Shown here: positions 20,641-50,099 of the stretch, in pieces
Layout of the letters: each line of letters starts with the position of its first letter
How positions within the stretch are numbered: the stretch's first letter is position 1
Source: Octopus bimaculoides
Lineage: Eukaryota
Length of the DNA stretch: 64,000 nt
NCBI RefSeq assembly: GCF_001194135.2
Contig: NC_068988.1
Coordinates: 3,495,245 to 3,559,244, forward strand
Direction of reading: 5' to 3'
The notes under the pieces: model-generated
The model's input: only the letters and a program-made list of their open reading frames with translations
What the model was told of the DNA's origin: nothing
Database searches by the model: none
Program-made: the position numbers and the translations under genes

Positions 20641-22879
20641 TCTACTTATTGACAAGGGAACCACTAAACTGATGGAGAGTTTTACAGGAGGAAGCATCAA
20701 AAACTATATCAGAATTTAAGGATGCCATCAACCCACAAAATAGCAGTCAGGTTAGTATCATCACACTTTATGTAATGAAGAAAACAAATCTAATTAATTA
20801 ATAATATTTATGTGATGAGGAAAAGAAAATAATTTATTGAATGTTTTAAATTAATTTTAAACTAATTAGTTCTTGATAAGTATGGATGACAACTACTGCA
20901 GAGTCAACCATGATTTTCCTTCTCTGTGTAAATGGCAGGCCTTGTAAAAATTGCACTGCATCCTAATAATGAGACAAAAAATAGTCAGTATGGATGGTCG
21001 TGGTGAAATAGGAGAAGGTTGACATGTAGAATTCTGAGTCTAGGAATTTACAATTCTCCAGTTACTACCTAATAAAGATGGCTAATCATCATATCTAAGA
21101 CAAGATATGTGTCTTTGTAATTCCTCGAAGCATCTGAATATTACTGCTAAACAATTATTGAAGATGGTAAGTCGATAGACATATTTCCTAATTATTGGTA
21201 TGCCACATCTTACAGTAGAAAGTGAGTTCTTCATCACCACTATCTTCTTCAATCCTTTATGTTAACATCTTATACCTTTGTTGACTGTAGCTTTTTTTTT
21301 TTTTGGCTTTTTTTTTTTTTAATTTGGGTCTTCAGTGTTCAGTATAGTTCTGAATGTCTATTTGACAATGACTATTTGGTATAAGTTTGTATGTACAGAG
21401 AATAATACAGAAAACGAGATCTCTGAGGAAGATTATGATAAACAAGTGGCAGATGATCAGTGTAAAATGTTCCTGCTGTTTAAATATTTGTTAAAATGAA
21501 AACACTTGTGATATTCAATAGTTTTAAGTGTTTTCTTTTTGTTTACTTTTTTACTGCTATAGGCTGTGGAAAATTAAACTACTGAAATTTTAATCTCTTT
21601 CAGTTACTTGTAAAATACCTCTGCAGAAATTAATTTGGAAAGAAAGCCATCATAACACAGTAAAGAATTCATCTAAATTTATTATCTTTGGGTTATGGCT
21701 GAAATCTATGAGATTGATTGGAGAATAGCTGAGGTCAAACTAATCAACCTTTTATAGTTTGGAATTAAGTTTCACTATTCATAGAATCAATGATGTTTTG
21801 ATTAAATGTAAATTGCCCCAAGGGACACAACAAACCTATTATCTTAAAAGATGTAGTATGAGTAAGTTCTTTGACAACTAGAACACTTTTATGCTGAAGA
21901 TTACAACAGACTAGAGTTAATTCTGTTATGTTCACATTATATATATAATTTTATAATCTGTCTCCCATGACTAAAAAAGACATAATCTTCTGTCATTAGG
22001 TAATCATGTCACTCAATTTAGCTTGACTTTAGACACTTATTTCTCGAATTAATTTTAAAAAACAGACTCATGACTCAGTATTGATCATGCTAATATTTAT
22101 CAGCTTCAGTGATTTACCAATAACTTTTTTTCTTTTCCTTTTTCTTTTTCTTTTAATGGCAACAAACACCCAATGATATCAGCTAAAGATTGCACTTTTA
22201 AGTGCTTGCTAGAAATAGAGGCCAACTCTTTTCAAGCCACATTCTACAGTTTTCAAAAAACAATGTATATGCAACCAGGACACATCATGTTTTAAACAAA
22301 GCCTGGACAATCACAGCTTGAATGTTTTTTTATCACACATCTGCTCAACTAAGCCTGACCTGAAGCTAAAAAACAATAACAACAAAAAGCCAAATATTGT
22401 TCAGAAACAGAAAGGATGATAAATAAATTCTGCAAGAATGGAAAATAAACAGTTTACTTACACTCATTCAATGTTTTAAATCTGGATTTTGTCCCTGTTA
22501 ACGGAGGTGGTTGGATCTACCTCAATTTCATAGCAACTGCTCGCACACCATTTTGCCCAGTTTTGGGTGTCCTCCTTTTTCAAACCAAACCTCCTAATCT
22601 CCTCCTCCACCTCGCCCCTCTACCTTTACCTCAGTCTACCTTGCTTTCATGCTCCATTTACCTCAAATGCAATCACCCTCCTCTGAACATGCTCTTCATC
22701 CCTCCTCAATACATGCCCATACCACCTCACTCCATTCACCCGTCCACTGATTTACTAAAACTATTACAAATATTTTTTTCTTTCTAATTCTAAAAGTTAC
22801 TCCAAGACATAAGCCTTTGGCTGAAAGCTTTGGAATTGCCCAAACATCAGACTCCCTCTCTCACCATTGCTATTAAGAC

Positions 22880-38129: not shown

Positions 38130-39391
38130 TTGTCATGTAAATTATGTAAAAATGAAAATAACACTGTCATCTCATTTTAACAGATATATTTACCAAACTT
38201 ACACAAAAACAACTTGAAATATTAAAAAGTAAATTAATTCAATAAAATTGCCATTAGCTTCAACCATGGCCTCCAGACGATTTTGGAATCAATGCAACTC
38301 TTTTGAATGGTCTCCTTGTTTAAGTTGAATGCTGCTGTAATCCTTGCCTTCAGTTCACCTTTTGTATTACTAGGAGTTTTCTTGGTCTCTCGCTCAACTG
38401 CACCCCACACATAATAATCAAGGGGGTTACAGTCTGAGGAGTTAGGTGGCCAGATGATAGGGGTGATGTGGTTGCAGAAATTGTCTGACAGCCATGACTG
38501 GGTTCTACTTGTGTGGCATAGTGCAGAGTCCTGTTGCCAGACATAGGGTCTTCTAGCAGCCACTCTCTTGACCCAGGGCAGCACTACCTCTTCCAGGCAT
38601 TTGATGTAGACCCCTGTGTTGAGTCTGAAACCATATGAGAAGATGAATGGAAGCATAACATCGCCATCACTCGTGATCACTTCAAAAACCAAGATGTTGA
38701 CCGGACATTTGATTTTTATCACTCTCAGTACATGTTTTGGGGATATGACAATCCAATGGTTGTTCTGTGCGTTCACCAACTCACTTGGCAGAAATTTTTC
38801 TCATCTGAGAAAAATCAAATCATATTCGGATTGAGAGATTGCTTTAGTTTGTTCAAAAGCTTTGTAGGGCGGTCTTTCCTCTTGTCCTTGATGGCTTCGG
38901 ATAAAAACTGGCCCTTTCTCATCTTGTATGAGGAATACTGAATGCCTTCATGCACTACCTGCCTCGTAAGATACTCAGACACTCCCATGTCACAAGTGAT
39001 GAACTTGTTTGACTTGGAGGGATTGTTGTCAATCATGGCCTGGATCTTACCAACAAATTCAAGAGTTCTTTTCTTATCAGAACAATCAAAGTGAATTTTC
39101 CAAGCTGACGTACCTTCATAATCACCATTAGACTCTTTCCAAATCCTCTGCACTGACCTCAGAATGATACCCCAAAACTCTGAAATGTCCGTATTGGAGC
39201 TGCTGGCACAAATGCCAAACAATGCAGCATGTCGTTTCCAAATTTTTGGCAGAATGAATTGCATCATGGTGCTGTCTTTCTCACAGGTGGTGCCCAACTG
39301 ACCCTACTATACTGTGTAGTCAACAAAATTAAAAACAATGTGCATGAACGAAATAAACATTTTAAATGGCAACAATCTATCCATCATACCC

Positions 39392-40118: not shown

Positions 40119-41074
40119 NNNNNNNNNNNNNNNNNNNNNNNNNNNNNNNNNNNNNNNNNNNNNNNNNNNNNNNNNNNNNNNNNNNNNNNNNNNNNNNNNN
40201 NNNNNNNNNNNNNNNNNNNNNNNNNNNNNNNNNNNNNNNNNNNNNNNNNNNNNNNNNNNNNNNNNNNNNNNNNNNNNNNNNNNNNNNNNNNNNNNNNNNN
40301 NNNNNNNNNNNNNNNNNNNNNNNNNNNNNNNNNNNNNNNNNNNNNNNNNNNNNNNNNNNNNNNNNNNNNNNNNNNNNNNNNNNNNNNNNNNNNNNNNNNN
40401 NNNNNNNNNNNNNNNNNNNNNNNNNNNNNNNNNNNNNNNNNNNNNNNNNNNNNNNNNNNNNNNNNNNNNNNNNNNNNNNNNNNNNNNNNNNNNNNNNNNN
40501 NNNNNNNNNNNNNNNNNNNNNNNNNNNNNNNNNNNNNNNNNNNNNNNNNNNNNNNNNNNNNNNNNNNNNNNNNNNNNNNNNNNNNNNNNNNNNNNNNNNN
40601 NNNNNNNNNNNNNNNNNNNNNNNNNNNNNNNNNNNNNNNNNNNNNNNNNNNNNNNNNNNNNNNNNNNNNNNNNNNNNNNNNNNNNNNNNNNNNNNNNNNN
40701 NNNNNNNNNNNNNNNNNNNNNNNNNNNNNNNNNNNNNNNNNNNNNNNNNNNNNNNNNNNNNNNNNNNNNNNNGCATTGTGCATGTGTGTGTATATATACA
40801 CATACATACACACCATGAGCAATGGAATCCAAAAGAAAAAAGACAATGGGACGGTCATGTTTTAAATATATTCCACAAAAGTTTAATACTTAAAAGGGAA
40901 GGAAAATAACCTTAATATTTTGGACGCTAGTCCTGAATCAGAAGTAAAAATATACAAGAAAGGGAAAAGATTGTGAAAGACGAAAAGTGGTTCAAGAGAG
41001 AAAGAAATATCAGGCAGAGTAACAAGTAAGCAACGTTTTGAAACATGAAATTCATCACAATGTATTTCAACAAT

Positions 41075-47324: not shown

Positions 47325-47706
47325 TACCGACAGCTCCATAAAGAAGTGCCAATCTCTTGAAGTGGAAGACATGGGATGAAGTACTGAAGAACAACCTCAG
47401 GAAGCTGAACCTTTCAGGTGAAATGACAAAGGAGCGAGATACCTGACACCTGGCTGTACTCAAGAAGACCCGTACTCTGCATCAGAAGTGTTAAGACCGA
47501 TCCTTCTGGTGATGAAAGACACTCATGGCAGTGCCATGTATAAGCACCCAGCACTTTCTGTAAAGTGGTTGGCATTAGGAAGGGCATCCAGCCATAGAAA
47601 CCATGCCAAATCAGACTGGAGCTTGGTGCAGCTCTCCAACTCGCTAGCTCTGGTCAAACCATCCAACCCATGCCACCATGGACAGCAGAGGTATGATGAT
47701 GATGAT
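47325..47706 (+). mobile_element. RTE LINE 3' end and 3' UTR tail
   Basis: MDTDSSIKKCQSLEVE..WDEVLK, then the shared tail ggcattaggaagggcatccagccatagaaac..ccaacccatgcca..(gat)n. Confidence 0.75.
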
Positions 47707-48454
47707 ATCAACAAGAGATAAATGCATGCATACATACATGCACACGTGCTTTCATAGATCAATGAAAAGGAAGCTTGCACTCTTTTACCACAGAATCTAG
47801 CTAGAATTATTCTGCTGAAACTAAAAATATAGCTAAATTTTATATTTACATCATTATTTAGATGCCATCATGATGAACGATCATATAAGCAAGAAACCTA
47901 ACTGTCAGCTAAAGAAATATATTTTAACTTCTTGGAGATTTTAGGTAAAATTATGCTAATGTGTCCATCTCTTTTAATTTAATTAAATTCTATGTCTTTG
48001 TGCAGCTGAGGATTGCTCTGCATTTTAAACTGATGTATTGATTGTATTGTTCAATTAAATGGAGTTGCATGAAATGATCGTACTGCATTACCTCTGGATA
48101 TCCTTGTTGCTTATTTTGATTATATATATANNNNNNNNNNNNNNNNNNNNNNNNNNNNNNNNNNNNNNNNNNNNNNNNNNNNNNNNNNNNNNNNNNNNNN
48201 NNNNNNNNNNNNNNNNNNNNNNNNNNNNNNNNNNNNNNNNNNNNNNNNNNNNNNNNNNNNNNNNNNNNNNNNNNNNNNNNNNNNNNNNNNNNNNNNNNNN
48301 NNNNNNNNNNNNNNNNNNNNNNNNNNNNNNNNNNNNNNNNNNNNNNNNNNNNNNNNNNNNNNNNNNNNNNNNNNNNNNNNNNNNNNNNNNNNNNNNNNNN
48401 NNNNNNNNNNNNNNNNNNNNNNNNNNNNNNNNNNNNNNNNNNNNNNNNNNNNNN

Positions 48455-48818
48455 CAGGGTTATTTCCCTTCGTCGGCGTTCGATAGCTGCTGACCTTGGT
48501 GAGAGAGACAAAAACCTGGCAATCTTATATCTTCTTTTCCAGTGAAATTCTTCACTGATATCGAAAAGGTGAAAACAAGCAATGTTAATTCTCTAAATGA
48601 AGTATTAACAGTAACTGCACGATAAAGTGTAGTATATTGCCACTTAAGTGTGGCTGACCCCTAGGGGTGGATGTTACTGTTGCTTTTAGCCCCAGGAGGA
48701 CATCTCCTCCAGCTGGCTTATCGACACACGACTGTGTCCTGTTTGCCAAGGGAAGTTATCCCTCTCACCACGATCTGCAGCACGAACGGATCCGGATTTC
48801 AGGGTTATTTCCCTTCGT
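48455..48818 (-). ncRNA. Retrozyme-like / Penelope pLTR-like 345-nt unit with a type I hammerhead ribozyme split across its ends
   Basis: A 19-bp direct repeat, cagggttatttcccttcgt, lies at 48455-48473 and 48800-48818 (period 345). Minus strand, read across the junction: CGAACG (stem I 5') - CCGACGA (core) - AGGG AAATAA CCCT (stem II) - GAAA - TCCGGAT C (stem III, AUC triplet) - CGTTCG (stem I 3'). Stem I extends to about 30 bp with few mismatches (48477-48508 vs 48757-48788). Confidence 0.85.
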
Positions 48819-50099
48819 ATATGTACATATATGAGCAATAAGAGACATATAGTTCAAAATCTTTTTGATTTGAAGTAGAAACACTAGAAGTTTATTCTAA
48901 AGGATGATGCAATGGAGCTCTGCAGCTGTTCATCTCAATGTTTAGGGAGATATTTGAGTGTTACATAGCAACGTGTGTGATGTTTATTGAGTTTATTATT
49001 ATAAATTCTGTTGAGGACAGAAAGTTGGCAGAATGGTTAGCATGCTGGACAAAATGCTTTACATTCCGAGTTCAAATACTACCAAGGTTATCTTTGCCTT
49101 TCCTCCATTTCCTGGATCAGTAAAATAAACAGCAGCTGAGTATAAAGACAAAGTTGACTTTGCTAGGATTGGGACACACAACCTGGAGAACTGAAATGTA
49201 GATTGTGAAGCGTTTTAAGTGACATCCTTATGACTTGCTGCCAACGCAACACCACGCAAACATACACATGCACACACACACACACACATCTGAATTTGAT
49301 CTAATTACTTTTGAGAGGAAAAGTTTGAGTCGATAGAAAATCAGTTCCTTTTGTGGATGTTGCTCCAACAATAATGTAGAAGAGAAACCCTCGGTTGTTG
49401 TTATTTACTGTAAATCTTTTAAGAACCATAAAGTTTAGTTGAGACAGTTGTTAGAATTTGACACATTTCCCAACTCTCCTTTATTGGGTTTATTTTCTTC
49501 AGAAATAATATCCAACTGTTTAGGGTGAAGTTTTTATACACATGTGTCTGTTTATCTATTTATCTGATCACTCATTGACTTTGTGGAAATCTTATTAGTT
49601 TTGATCAGAGTTTGTGCTAACATAAGTAGGAGAGCCAAACAAGTGTTTAGTTCTTCCTCATAAGCACATTATAATTTCTAAGTGGTGCCACAGACATGAT
49701 ACAGACTTCATTTAGAATAGAATTTATCCAAAGAATGGTGTGATAAGAAAAAATATATAAGAAGTTGACCATTGCATAAAAAGTTGACAATTATGGCTTT
49801 CTACTCTGGACCTATTTTCACAAAGACCAAAATGAATTTATTTTCAACAGTGTTACATCTAATAAATCAAAGCTGCAGTCACTATTGTTCAATGTAATTA
49901 AATTTATTCATTTTCAGCATCAATTTTTGCAGACAAAATATTATAAAAGACTCAGTGATGGTTTTCATAACTTACAAAGTGGATGTGAAGTTATTGTTTT
50001 ATTTTTGGGGTGCGGTGGAGTGAGGTGGGGGATGAAATCGTGTAGGAGACAGTCTTTGATGGTACTTCTTTTGACAGCTATCTCCTTTCTTAGAACCCA

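What the first reader, a model, noticed from the sequence alone, without database searches (positions are those of the whole stretch)
48455..48818. 345-nt retrozyme-like unit: a hammerhead ribozyme that forms only across a tandem or circular junction
Seen: the unit starts and ends with the same 19 bp, 345 nt apart. On the minus strand the low-coordinate end supplies stem I 5' (48508-48477), the core CCGACGA (48476-48470) and stem II AGGG-AAATAA-CCCT. The high-coordinate end supplies stem II again, GAAA (48800-48797), stem III, the AUC triplet (predicted cut between 48789 and 48788) and stem I 3' (48788-48757). Stem I pairs over about 30 bp (CGAACG/CGTTCG, GCAGC/GCTGC, CTCTCACCA/TGGTGAGAG). The unit keeps many CpGs in AT-rich surroundings, has TA-rich sequence on its right, and its left end abuts a 324-N gap bordered by (TA)n. 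Established: metazoan non-LTR retrozymes are tandem repeats of a few hundred nt carrying type I hammerheads; they self-cleave into monomers that circularise. Penelope pLTRs also carry type I hammerheads. Inference: this is a young cephalopod retrozyme-like or non-autonomous Penelope-related element able to yield a ~345-nt circRNA, and the gap may hide further monomer sequence. I cannot tell whether the family is already catalogued.
Basis: partly seen in the sequence, partly recalled or inferred. Interest (0 to 1): 0.92.

Follow-up and report, generated by a model that had tools for sequence, protein, structure and literature searches.

The report
Hammerhead-ribozyme tandem repeat (retrozyme) copy
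This is one truncated copy of a 345-bp head-to-tail repeat present tens of thousands of times in this (probably octopus) genome. Across the joint between two units it encodes a Schistosoma-like hammerhead ribozyme, so it belongs to a known class of mobile element, though its catalytic core carries an unusual change (U4 to C).

Summary
An exact 19-bp direct repeat lies 345 bp apart. On the minus strand, a complete type I hammerhead forms only across the unit joint. It has a 29-bp stem I, a 4-bp stem II with a 6-nt A-rich loop, GAAA, a 2-bp stem III inside the palindrome AUCCGGAU, and C17. None of 2000 shuffled units gave such a motif.

Position 4 is C here and in about 94-98% of family copies. 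U4C is a known activity-lowering variant.

Public reads show a very abundant family of roughly 3x10^4 to 10^5 units. Head-to-tail continuation is seen in DNA contigs and in 98 junction-spanning RNA reads. A second species also holds the joint in RNA. Truncated copies abut (TA)n at varied positions.

Both RNA senses exist and carry RNA-only A>G and T>C changes, the signature of A-to-I editing. No read ends pile up at the predicted cut site. Circularity and self-cleavage remain untested.

As assembled, this locus holds no complete ribozyme. It is a new member of the metazoan non-LTR retrozyme (hammerhead satellite) class, closest in design to Schistosoma Sm-alpha. A link to Penelope-like elements was not testable.

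The parts
48455..48799 (-). One full 345-bp repeat unit (monomer) of the family; no ORF
   Evidence: 345-bp period from the exact 19-bp repeat. RNA reads join 48799 back to 48455. The longest stop-free stretch in a trimer is 83 aa. The cleaved-form monomer folds at -130.4 kcal/mol, z = -7.7.
48800..48818 (-). First 19 bp of a second unit, truncated at the 5' end of the ribozyme strand. It starts at core position A6 and lacks C3, C4, G5 and the stem I 5' strand.
   Evidence: Sequence. In other genomic copies and in RNA the sequence after 48818 continues CGGCGTTCGA.AGCTG, which is the next unit.
48477..48510 (-). Hammerhead stem I, 5' strand. It comprises the proximal 6 bp CGAACG, the 3-nt internal-loop side UAU (48485-48483), then GCAGC, GGUC and a 14-nt distal arm.
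   Evidence: Fold of the junction sequence and inverted repeat I1.
48470..48476 (-). Hammerhead core strand C3-A9 = CCGACGA, where the consensus is CUGANGA. Position 4 (48475) is C.
   Evidence: Sequence. Family frequencies: the change that gives U4 is at 1.8% and 5.9% of DNA contig depth and 11% of RNA reads. N7 C>A is at 6-9%. The other core positions vary below 0.1%.
48456..48469 (-). Stem II (AGGG/CCCU, with 10.1-11.1 = A-U) and the 6-nt loop 2 AAAUAA. The same sequence is repeated at 48801-48814.
   Evidence: Invariant in DNA contigs. Same sizes as the Schistosoma Sm1/N79 stem II and loop CAAAUA.
48790..48800 (-). G12 A13 A14 A15.1 (48800-48797) and stem III: A15.1-U16.1, U15.2-A16.2 and loop CCGG. 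The 8 nt AUCCGGAU are a perfect palindrome.
   Evidence: Sequence. GAAA and U16.1 vary below 0.01%. 48796 A>G and 48791 T>C occur at matching frequencies (2.5/3.3% in X1, 10.0/10.9% in X2), turning U-A into C-G.
48788..48789 (-). Predicted cleavage site, between C17 (48789) and C1.1 (48788)
   Evidence: Position in the fold. Position 17 is C or A in the family (A in 49-81% of DNA depth and 58% of RNA reads) and never G. No excess of read ends here.
48757..48788 (-). Hammerhead stem I, 3' strand: CGUUCG, single U (48782), GCUGC, GAUC and the distal arm
   Evidence: Positions 1.1-1.6 are invariant in the family.
48131..48454 (.). 324-N assembly gap that hides the 3' continuation of the ribozyme strand
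   Evidence: Its content could not be recovered. No long-read run is served, and the left flank is itself repetitive.
48121..48130 (.). (TA)5 bordering the gap on the left; probable target microsatellite
   Evidence: Other copies of the left-flank repeat continue differently after 48121.
48819..48833 (.). TA-rich right flank ATATGTACATATATG; probable other half of the target microsatellite
   Evidence: Other truncated family copies also abut (TA)n.

Best explanation
WHAT IT IS. The 364 bp are 1.05 units of a 345-bp head-to-tail repeat family of the metazoan non-LTR retrozyme (hammerhead satellite) kind. The family has tens of thousands of units in this genome.

ANATOMY. The minus strand of two joined units encodes a full type I hammerhead built like the Schistosoma Sm-alpha ribozyme:
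- a 6-bp proximal stem I
- a UAU/U internal loop
- a 4-bp stem II with a 6-nt A-rich loop
- GAAA
- a 2-bp stem III inside the palindrome AUCCGGAU
- H17
The core has C where the consensus has U4.

LIKELY MECHANISM.
1. Arrays are transcribed. This is shown: RNA reads span the unit joint and both senses exist.
2. The ribozyme-sense multimer cuts itself after position 17 (48789|48788). This is inferred. Because of U4C it is probably slow, or helped by pairing of two ribozymes through the palindromic stem III, or by a protein.
3. The 345-nt monomer has ends held together by the 29-bp stem I and is closed into a circle by a cellular RNA ligase. This is inferred from the mussel, coral and axolotl retrozymes.
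4. The reverse transcriptase/endonuclease of a Penelope-like element copies the RNA into (TA)n sites, giving partial or multiple tandem copies with variable truncation points. This is inferred; the TA flanks and varied end points are shown.

THIS LOCUS. It is a truncated insertion in a (TA)n tract. As assembled it has no complete ribozyme and cannot release a monomer unless the gap hides more units.

CONFIDENCE. About 0.9 that it is a member of such a family. About 0.5 that the C4 ribozyme still cleaves in vivo.
For: - Repeat and fold.
- Motif specificity: 1 hit in the dimer, 0 in 2000 shuffles, 1 in 128 kb of window.
- Architecture in register with Sm1/N79 from the distal GCAG to GAAA without gaps.
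- Family size: summed contig depth of 2.0-3.0x10^6 against single-copy depths of 63 and 48 in X2 and X8 gives about 3-6x10^4 units. X13 gives about 10^5.
- Head-to-tail joints in DNA: loose ends after 48818 read CGGCGTTCGA.AGCTG.
- Head-to-tail joints in RNA: the joint 48799>48455 is seen in 98 reads from 44 start points in X37, and in a 153-nt RNA contig of a second species, X29.
- The reads are RNA, not DNA carry-over: 29 mismatch sites seen only in RNA are all A>G or T>C (p = 3x10^-23).
- Family variation falls where a hammerhead tolerates it: N7, N17 (C/A, never G), 2.4 A>G giving a G-U pair, and a matched U-A to C-G change at 15.2-16.2. G5, A6, G8, A9, GAAA, U16.1, stem II and the proximal stem I are invariant.
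- A divergent subfamily has the canonical core CUGAAGA (loose ends).
- Strong self-pairing: z = -7.7.
- GC 45%, no ORF.
- Truncated copies abut (TA)n at 48577, 48582, 48622, 48500 and 48762.
- Literature: features of non-LTR retrozymes (PMC7229834); retrozymes as derivatives of Penelope-like elements (10.64898/2026.07.22.740005); (TA)n or AT-rich targets of Penelope-like endonucleases (PMC8557442, PMC11167929); a U4C viroid variant that cleaves less in vitro yet remains infectious (PMC3088659).
Against: - U4 is C in this copy and in about 94-98% of copies. U4 is one of the strictly conserved core bases, and changes there generally lower activity strongly (PMC3088659).
- The 10.1-11.1 pair is A-U rather than the usual G-C.
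- The minimum-energy fold pairs C3-C4-G5 with CGG of the stem III loop. This competes with the catalytic fold.
- No Rfam hit, though the ribozyme is split in the window.
- No excess of RNA read ends and no dip in depth at 48789|48788.
- With only about 15% of unit positions variable at 5% or more, invariance of ten core bases is not significant on its own (roughly p = 0.2, my estimate).
- Circles cannot be told from tandem transcripts with 150-nt reads.
- No Penelope-like ORF was examined.
Confidence: 0.6

Rival explanations
1. Hammerhead-derived satellite with a dead ribozyme. An ancestral retrozyme with a canonical core acquired U4C. The C4 lineage then expanded as tandem DNA without any need for self-cleavage or RNA circles, either by unequal exchange or by Penelope-type copying of uncut RNA. 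Its transcripts are read-through or array transcripts.
For: - C4 in about 94-98% of copies, while a divergent minority subfamily keeps CUGAAGA.
- No read ends at the cut site, and full read-through of it.
- Both senses are transcribed and edited as double-stranded RNA.
- In a Penelope-like element, hammerhead cleavage was not needed for insertion in vitro, and no RNA-seq ends were seen at its site (PMC11167929).
- The invariance of the core is statistically weak in so young a family.
Against: - Matched U-A to C-G change in stem III.
- Position 17 is restricted to C/A.
- 2.4 A>G keeps the pair. Together these fit continued selection for the fold.
- Many dispersed, differently truncated copies in (TA)n argue for RNA-mediated spread rather than array expansion alone.
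- A natural U4C viroid hammerhead still works in vivo (PMC3088659).
- C4-G5 is a CpG that should decay to the canonical U4 in a CpG-depleted genome, yet C dominates.
Confidence: 0.3
2. Ordinary terminal repeat (pLTR) of an autonomous Penelope-like element. The 345 bp would be part of a several-kb coding element whose body is hidden in the gap or deleted.
For: Penelope-like elements carry hammerheads in their terminal repeats. They form partial tandems, are 5'-truncated and prefer AT-rich or microsatellite targets (PMC4209133, PMC8557442, PMC11167929). The left end of this copy is hidden by a gap.
Against: - The dominant continuation after the unit end, in DNA and in RNA, is the start of the same 345-bp unit, so the period is 345 bp and not kilobases.
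- The gap is only 324 N.
- No ORF of 110 aa or more with reverse-transcriptase or endonuclease character lies in the 64-kb window. The only transposase-like ORFs are mariner/Tc1-type, 9 kb away.
- Penelope hammerheads are described as minimal forms lacking helix III and the loop-loop contacts (PMC6155905, PMC7229834). This one has both.
Confidence: 0.05
3. Chance motif or assembly artefact. The 19-bp repeat and the hammerhead-like fold would be accidental, or produced by mis-joining at the gap.
For: No Rfam hit. One core mismatch. The copy sits at a gap.
Against: 0 of 2000 shuffles give the motif. The same unit and the same joint are present in many independent DNA and RNA runs from 2015 to 2026 and in a second species.
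Confidence: 0.01

Closest known systems
Schistosoma mansoni Sm-alpha repeat and its Sm1 hammerhead (source of the engineered N79 ribozyme)
   Same: - A repeat unit of a few hundred bp (about 335 bp, from my own knowledge) with a type I hammerhead.
- The ribozyme aligns gap-free from the distal stem I (GCAG) to GAAA.
- Both have a 6-bp proximal stem I, an internal loop of UAY on the 5' strand against a single U on the 3' strand, a 4-bp stem II and a 6-nt A-rich loop 2 (CAAAUA against AAAUAA).
   Different: - Core CCGACGA instead of CUGAUGA (U4C).
- The 10.1-11.1 pair is A-U instead of G-C.
- Stem III is only 2 bp plus a CCGG loop inside an 8-nt palindrome.
- Stem I extends to 29 bp.
- No sequence similarity outside the ribozyme was tested.
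- Different phylum.
Metazoan non-LTR retrozymes (Cervera and de la Pena 2020, PMC7229834), e.g. the 350-390-bp units of Mytilus galloprovincialis
   Same: - Type I hammerhead in short tandem repeats of 150-450 bp.
- GC below 50%.
- No LTR, PBS, PPT or ORF.
- Highly self-paired unit.
- Transcribed.
- The mussel units are of nearly the same size and also come from a mollusc.
   Different: - About 5000 hammerheads in the mussel against tens of thousands of units here.
- The mussel ribozymes lack most of the archetypal loop-loop nucleotides, whereas this one has the Sm1-like loops.
- Circles and cleavage (about 0.1 per min in the mussel) are shown there and untested here.
- The core is canonical there and C4 here.
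Amphibian satellite 2 / axolotl retrozymes (HHR_Amex1 and HHR_Amex2)
   Same: - Units of 330-350 bp in very high copy number (about 120,000 motifs).
- Weak stem III (1-2 bp) capped by a palindromic tetraloop.
- The ribozymes cleave well only as dimers (PMC7229834, PMC6155905). The palindrome AUCCGGAU here allows the same double-hammerhead pairing.
   Different: Dimer dependence is only inferred here. The amphibian cores are canonical.
Hammerheads in the terminal repeats (pLTR) of Penelope-like elements
   Same: - Type I topology.
- Partial tandem copies and 5' truncation.
- AT-rich or (TA)n targets.
- No RNA-seq ends at the cut site in the anole element (PMC11167929).
- Retrozymes are now argued to be non-autonomous derivatives of these elements (10.64898/2026.07.22.740005).
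   Different: - Those ribozymes are minimal, without helix III and loop contacts.
- Their unit is a several-kb coding element.
- Here the unit is 345 bp, non-coding, with a full-format ribozyme.
Natural U4C hammerhead variant of a viroid (cited in Perreault et al. 2011, PMC3088659)
   Same: The same core substitution. It lowers activity in vitro but remains compatible with biological function.
   Different: It is a sequence variant of an infectious plant RNA with a type III ribozyme. It is not the majority state of a genomic repeat family.

Membership tests
Hammerhead ribozyme, type I | Three helices around a junction, with stem I open and stems II and III closed by loops | tested here: met
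   The fold of the junction sequence gives stem I (29 bp) and stem II. Stem III (A-U, U-A, loop CCGG) fits the descriptor. The minimum-energy fold prefers an alternative CCG/CGG pairing over stem III.
Hammerhead ribozyme, type I | Conserved core C3 U4 G5 A6 N7 G8 A9 ... G12 A13 A14 A15.1 ... U16.1 H17 | tested here: not met
   10 of the 11 fixed bases are present. U4 is C (48475) in this copy and in about 94-98% of family DNA depth. H17 = C, or A in other copies. The strict descriptor finds nothing.
Hammerhead ribozyme, type I | Score at or above the Rfam gathering threshold for a hammerhead model | tested here: inconclusive
   No hit on the window at the gathering threshold. No hit on either half at E up to 10. 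The motif is split in the window, and an in-silico dimer cannot be submitted to the tool.
Hammerhead ribozyme, type I | Loop 2 / stem I internal-loop format that gives the tertiary contact of fast natural ribozymes | tested here: met
   Same spacing and loop sizes as Sm1/N79: 6 bp, then UAU/U against UAC/U, and loop 2 AAAUAA against CAAAUA. The contact itself is inferred.
Hammerhead ribozyme, type I | Site-specific self-cleavage 3' of position 17 | not testable with these tools
   Only indirect evidence: no excess of RNA read ends at 48789|48788 in run X37. Circles or uncut RNA would give the same picture.
Metazoan non-LTR retrozyme | Type I hammerhead inside short head-to-tail repeats (150-450 bp), from dimers to long arrays | tested here: met
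   345-bp period. Head-to-tail continuation in DNA contigs and RNA reads. Array lengths are unknown because no long reads are served.
Metazoan non-LTR retrozyme | Low GC (below 50%); no LTR, PBS or PPT; no coding capacity | tested here: met
   GC 45%. The longest stop-free stretch in a trimer is 83 aa. The unit is a plain tandem repeat.
Metazoan non-LTR retrozyme | Unit RNA is highly self-paired | tested here: met
   -130.4 kcal/mol, z = -7.7, with 0 of 100 shuffles as stable.
Metazoan non-LTR retrozyme | Expressed as unit-length linear and circular RNA | tested here: inconclusive
   RNA with the unit joint is present in two species and is genuine RNA. 150-nt reads cannot separate circles from tandem transcripts.
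Metazoan non-LTR retrozyme | Coexistence with, and mobilisation by, autonomous Penelope-like elements | not tested
   No Penelope-like ORF in the window. The genome could not be searched. (TA)n flanks of many truncated copies fit the target preference of Penelope-like endonucleases (PMC8557442, PMC11167929).
Penelope-like element terminal repeat (pLTR) | The repeat arises from tandem copies of a several-kb element that codes for reverse transcriptase and GIY-YIG endonuclease | tested here: not met
   The period is 345 bp in DNA and RNA. No such ORF lies in the window. The gap is 324 N.
Penelope-like element terminal repeat (pLTR) | Minimal hammerhead lacking helix III and loop-loop contacts | tested here: not met
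   The ribozyme has a 2-bp helix III with a tetraloop and Sm1-type loops. The family description comes from PMC6155905 and PMC7229834.

The most novel reading that the evidence does not exclude
The C4 core is not decay but the working state of the most successful lineage. Under this reading, a hammerhead attenuated by U4C would favour accumulation and copying of the RNA over its destruction. Three features could contribute: the CCG/CGG alternative pairing that C4 strengthens, dimer formation through the AUCCGGAU palindrome, or help from a protein. This would explain why the C4 lineage outgrew the canonical CUGAAGA subfamily by 10 to 50 fold. It would also explain why C4 persists although it sits in a CpG whose decay would restore U4. 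A-to-I editing of both RNA senses could add a further layer of control.
Probability: 0.2. Interest if true: 0.6.

Novelty: new member of a known kind. Interest (0 to 1): 0.4.

Why it matters
- If the taxon is confirmed, it adds a cephalopod lineage to the animals that carry hammerhead retrozymes. The searched paper library holds no paper linking hammerheads or retrozymes to cephalopods.
- It shows that searches demanding the strict CUGANGA core, and Rfam scans of linear assemblies, miss a family of tens of thousands of copies.
- It offers a natural experiment on how much core degeneracy (U4C) a ribozyme-bearing mobile element tolerates.
- The repeat RNA is a substrate for A-to-I editing on both senses. 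That is relevant to how an animal with very active editing handles repeat-derived double-stranded RNA.
- For annotation, the practical point is that this locus is a truncated repeat copy, not a functional ribozyme gene.

Tried and rejected
- Rfam at the gathering threshold on the whole window, and at E up to 10 on 48455-48900, 48745-48818 and 48455-48512: no hammerhead hit. The only two matches, at E about 2.3, were to unrelated families. They were taken as chance.
- No Infernal in the sandbox, so an in-silico dimer could not be scored.
- Scan of metagenome contigs for CYGANGAAGGGAAATAACCCTGAAA: 0 matches.
- Exact-product look-up of the mariner-like ORF: not on record.
- Searches for PacBio or Nanopore runs to resolve the gap and array lengths: none served.
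- Laying DNA contigs on the left flank to read into the gap failed. The flank up to 48121 is itself a repeat of about 10^4 copies.
- DNA contamination as the source of the RNA reads: rejected. 29 of 29 RNA-only mismatch sites are A>G or T>C.
- Using the first-mate strand to decide which sense is expressed: rejected. A>G and T>C do not segregate by mate class, so the library behaves as unstranded.
- The variant table (10% threshold) omitted sites that searches show to be common. I therefore relied on the short-stretch calls.
- The one other loose-descriptor hit in the window (minus strand near 21.59-21.63 kb, core CTGCAGA) was taken as chance.
- Two older papers (Martick and Scott 2006; Ferbeyre 1998) are not held. 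The Sm1-derived sequence was taken from PMC12550524 instead.
- First Python fold timed out and was rerun.
Full report
1. WHAT IS IN THE SEQUENCE

- CAGGGTTATTTCCCTTCGT occurs exactly at 48455-48473 and at 48800-48818, 345 bp apart.
- The lower copy touches the 324-N gap 48131-48454. That gap is preceded by (TA)5 at 48121-48130.
- The upper copy is followed by ATATGTACATATATG.
- There is no second copy of the unit in the 64-kb window.
- The unit has 45% GC against 34% for the window. Its CpG observed/expected ratio is 0.70 against 0.24.

On the minus strand the two ends of the unit supply the two halves of a type I hammerhead.

- Low-coordinate end: stem I 5' strand (48510-48477), the core strand CCGACGA (48476-48470), and stem II AGGG/CCCU with loop AAAUAA (48469-48456).
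- High-coordinate end: stem II again, then GAAA (48800-48797) and stem III (A-U, U-A, loop CCGG; 48797-48790). Then come C17 (48789) and the stem I 3' strand (48788-57).

When the junction sequence is folded, stem I forms 6+5+4+14 = 29 bp with three small internal loops. The upper copy begins at core position A6. As assembled, the locus therefore holds no complete ribozyme.

2. IS IT MORE THAN CHANCE?

I wrote a type I hammerhead descriptor. It requires stem I of at least 5 bp, a 7-nt core, stem II of at least 3 bp, GAAA, stem III of at least 2 bp including A15.1-U16.1, and H17.

- With one core mismatch allowed, it hits the in-silico dimer once, on the minus strand.
- It hits none of 2000 shuffled units on either strand.
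- It hits one other place in the 128 kb of both window strands.
- With a strict CUGANGA core it finds nothing.

Rfam gives no hit for the window or for either half. The motif is split in the window, and the tools cannot take an artificial dimer. The Rfam test is therefore inconclusive rather than negative.

3. COMPARISON OF THE RIBOZYME FORMAT

The N79 ribozyme is engineered from the Schistosoma mansoni Sm1 hammerhead. Its sequence is printed in PMC12550524. It aligns with the junction sequence without gaps from the distal stem I (GCAG) through GAAA. Shared features:

- a 6-bp proximal stem I
- a three-base internal-loop side (UAU here, UAC there) facing a single U
- a 4-bp stem II
- a 6-nt A-rich loop 2 (AAAUAA here, CAAAUA there)

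This is the full-format type I ribozyme of retrozymes and hammerhead satellites. It is not the minimal form without helix III and loop contacts that is described for Penelope-like elements (PMC6155905, PMC7229834).

Stem III is short, and the 8 nt AUCCGGAU are a perfect palindrome. That is the feature which lets newt and axolotl ribozymes act as double hammerheads (PMC7229834, PMC6155905).

4. THE FAMILY, FROM PUBLIC READS

Nearly all sampled 31-mers of the unit are held by many DNA runs of one organism (coded A), dated 2015-2025. RNA runs of that organism hold 70-91% of them. RNA runs of a second organism (E) hold about 60%.

Copy number:
- Summed contig depth over the unit is 2.0-3.0x10^6 in runs X2 and X8.
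- Single-copy depths on a unique 297-bp contig are 63 and 48.
- That gives about 3-6x10^4 units. X13 gives about 10^5.
- These are rough figures.

Head-to-tail arrangement:
- Contigs that run past 48818 continue CGGCGTTCGA.AGCTG, which is the start of the next unit.
- In raw RNA reads of run X37, 98 reads from 44 start points join 48799 back to 48455.
- A 153-nt RNA contig of organism E does the same.

Insertion sites: other copies stop at different internal positions and abut (TA)n. Examples are before 48577, 48582 and 48622, and after 48500 and 48762. This points to dispersed, variably truncated insertions into TA microsatellites, like the window copy.

5. VARIATION WITHIN THE RIBOZYME (shares of DNA contig depth in X1 / X2)

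- Position 4: the change to the canonical U is at 1.8% / 5.9%. In RNA it is 11%, but from only two start points.
- N7: C>A at 5.8% / 8.6%.
- N17: C>A at 81% / 49% (58% of RNA reads). It is never G.
- Position 2.4: A>G at 10% / 29%. This keeps a G-U pair with U1.4.
- Stem III pair 15.2-16.2: U>C at 2.5% / 10.0% and A>G at 3.3% / 10.9%. The matching frequencies turn U-A into C-G.
- Invariant (below 0.1%): G5, A6, G8, A9, G12-A15.1, U16.1, stem II, loop 2 and the proximal stem I.

Loose ends reveal a divergent subfamily whose core reads CUGAAGA, which is canonical.

The pattern is what a constrained hammerhead would show. The family is so young, however, that invariance of ten bases is weak evidence on its own (my estimate, p about 0.2). 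The stem III covariation is suggestive, not proof.

C4-G5 is a CpG in a CpG-poor genome. Its decay would restore U4, yet C dominates.

6. WHAT U4C MEANS

U4 belongs to the strictly conserved core, and most core changes lower activity strongly. A natural U4C viroid variant cleaves much less in vitro but remains infectious (PMC3088659).

In the minimum-energy fold, C3-C4-G5 pair with CGG of the stem III loop. This competes with the active fold.

The C4 ribozyme may therefore be slow, dependent on a dimer or a protein, or dead. I cannot decide between these from sequence.

7. RNA EVIDENCE

In 48575-48700, run X37 shows 29 mismatch sites at 4% or more that are below 0.5% in three DNA runs. All 29 are A>G (11 sites) or T>C (18 sites). 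All seven variants of other types have DNA support at 2-33% (binomial p = 3x10^-23). From this I conclude three things:

- The reads are RNA, not DNA carry-over.
- Both senses are transcribed.
- Both senses are edited from A to I, which implies double-stranded RNA.

A>G and T>C do not sort by first-mate strand. The library therefore behaves as unstranded, and the near-equal strand depths say nothing.

No excess of read ends and no dip in depth is seen at 48789|48788. That fits circles, uncut RNA, or both. The same absence was reported for a Penelope-like element whose ribozyme is active in vitro (PMC11167929).

The monomer is very strongly self-paired: -130.4 kcal/mol, z = -7.7 for the ribozyme sense and z = -6.2 for the other sense. 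This matches the description of retrozyme RNAs.

8. WHAT IT IS AND HOW IT PROBABLY WORKS

Identity (confidence about 0.9): it is a truncated copy of a non-LTR retrozyme (hammerhead satellite) family.

Mechanism:
- Shown: the tandem organisation, transcription across unit joints, the ribozyme fold with one core deviation, and TA-rich insertion sites with varied truncation.
- Inferred from the mussel, coral and axolotl systems (PMC7229834) and from work on Penelope-like elements (PMC8557442, PMC11167929, 10.64898/2026.07.22.740005):
  - self-cleavage after position 17
  - closure of the 345-nt monomer by a cellular RNA ligase
  - copying by the reverse transcriptase of a Penelope-like element into (TA)n

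Main rival (0.3): a hammerhead-derived satellite whose ribozyme was inactivated by U4C and which spreads without cleavage.

An ordinary Penelope terminal repeat is unlikely (0.05):
- the period is 345 bp
- the ribozyme is full-format
- the window has no reverse-transcriptase or GIY-YIG ORF
- the only transposase-like ORFs, at 38234-39297, are mariner/Tc1-type

9. TAXON AND NOVELTY

The organism is coded in the tools. The best named relative of the mariner-like ORF is an Octopus bimaculoides protein at 66% identity. The run dates also fit that genome project. 'Cephalopod' is therefore plausible but not shown.

The searched library holds no paper that links hammerheads or retrozymes to cephalopods. 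The 2020 retrozyme paper and its held supplement do not mention them. Repbase and Dfam could not be checked.

I rate this a new member of a known kind. The majority C4 core is the one feature that might lift it to a new variant if the ribozyme proves active.

Noticed in passing
window 48575-48700 (also 48462/48807, 48797-48808): RNA run X37 shows 29 mismatch sites (11 A>G, 18 T>C, 4-20% each) that are virtually absent from three DNA runs. Every other mismatch type has DNA support. This is the signature of A-to-I editing of both RNA senses of the repeat. A few low-level T>C sites fall on core or loop adenines of the ribozyme sense (A15.1, A14, loop 2).
   Followed up: partly
window 48472-48495 as seen in other copies (loose ends after 48816): A divergent subfamily (3-4 contigs in each of two DNA runs) reads TTCAGCGTATGATAG... 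after the unit end. That gives the canonical core CUGAAGA and a different proximal stem I. Whether it also carries the C-G stem III variant could not be determined.
   Followed up: partly
window 47544-47697: Extremely abundant repeat. Summed contig depth reaches 9x10^6 in X2 against a single-copy depth of 63, or roughly 10^5 copies. Many internal-deletion joints appear between 47581 and 47662.
   Followed up: no
window 47918-48121: Another repeat of about 10^4 copies forms the left flank. Other copies continue TTAATCACCTTA... after 48121, where the window has (TA)5 and the gap. The retrozyme copy therefore sits in a TA tract at the edge of an older repeat.
   Followed up: no
window 49005-49100: Short SINE-like repeat of several thousand copies at 90% identity or more. 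It is also abundant in RNA contigs. Other copies are preceded by ...AAGGCGGTGAGC.
   Followed up: no
window 38234-39297 (-): Two adjacent ORFs (181 and 160 aa) of a broken mariner/Tc1-type transposase. One weaker homologue (P0009) carries the precomputed Pfam domain PF13358. The best named relative is an Octopus bimaculoides protein at 66% identity.
   Followed up: partly
window, 11 N-gaps (e.g. 28,9xx-29,230; 40119-40772; 48131-48454): Several of the assembly gaps examined are bordered by microsatellites (TA, CA/TG, TC). The assembly seems to break at simple repeats, which are also the insertion sites of this family, so copies may be under-represented in it.
   Followed up: no
window about 21590-21630 (-): The only other hit of the loose hammerhead descriptor (core CTGCAGA, one mismatch, stem I 5 bp). 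Taken as a chance match.
   Followed up: no
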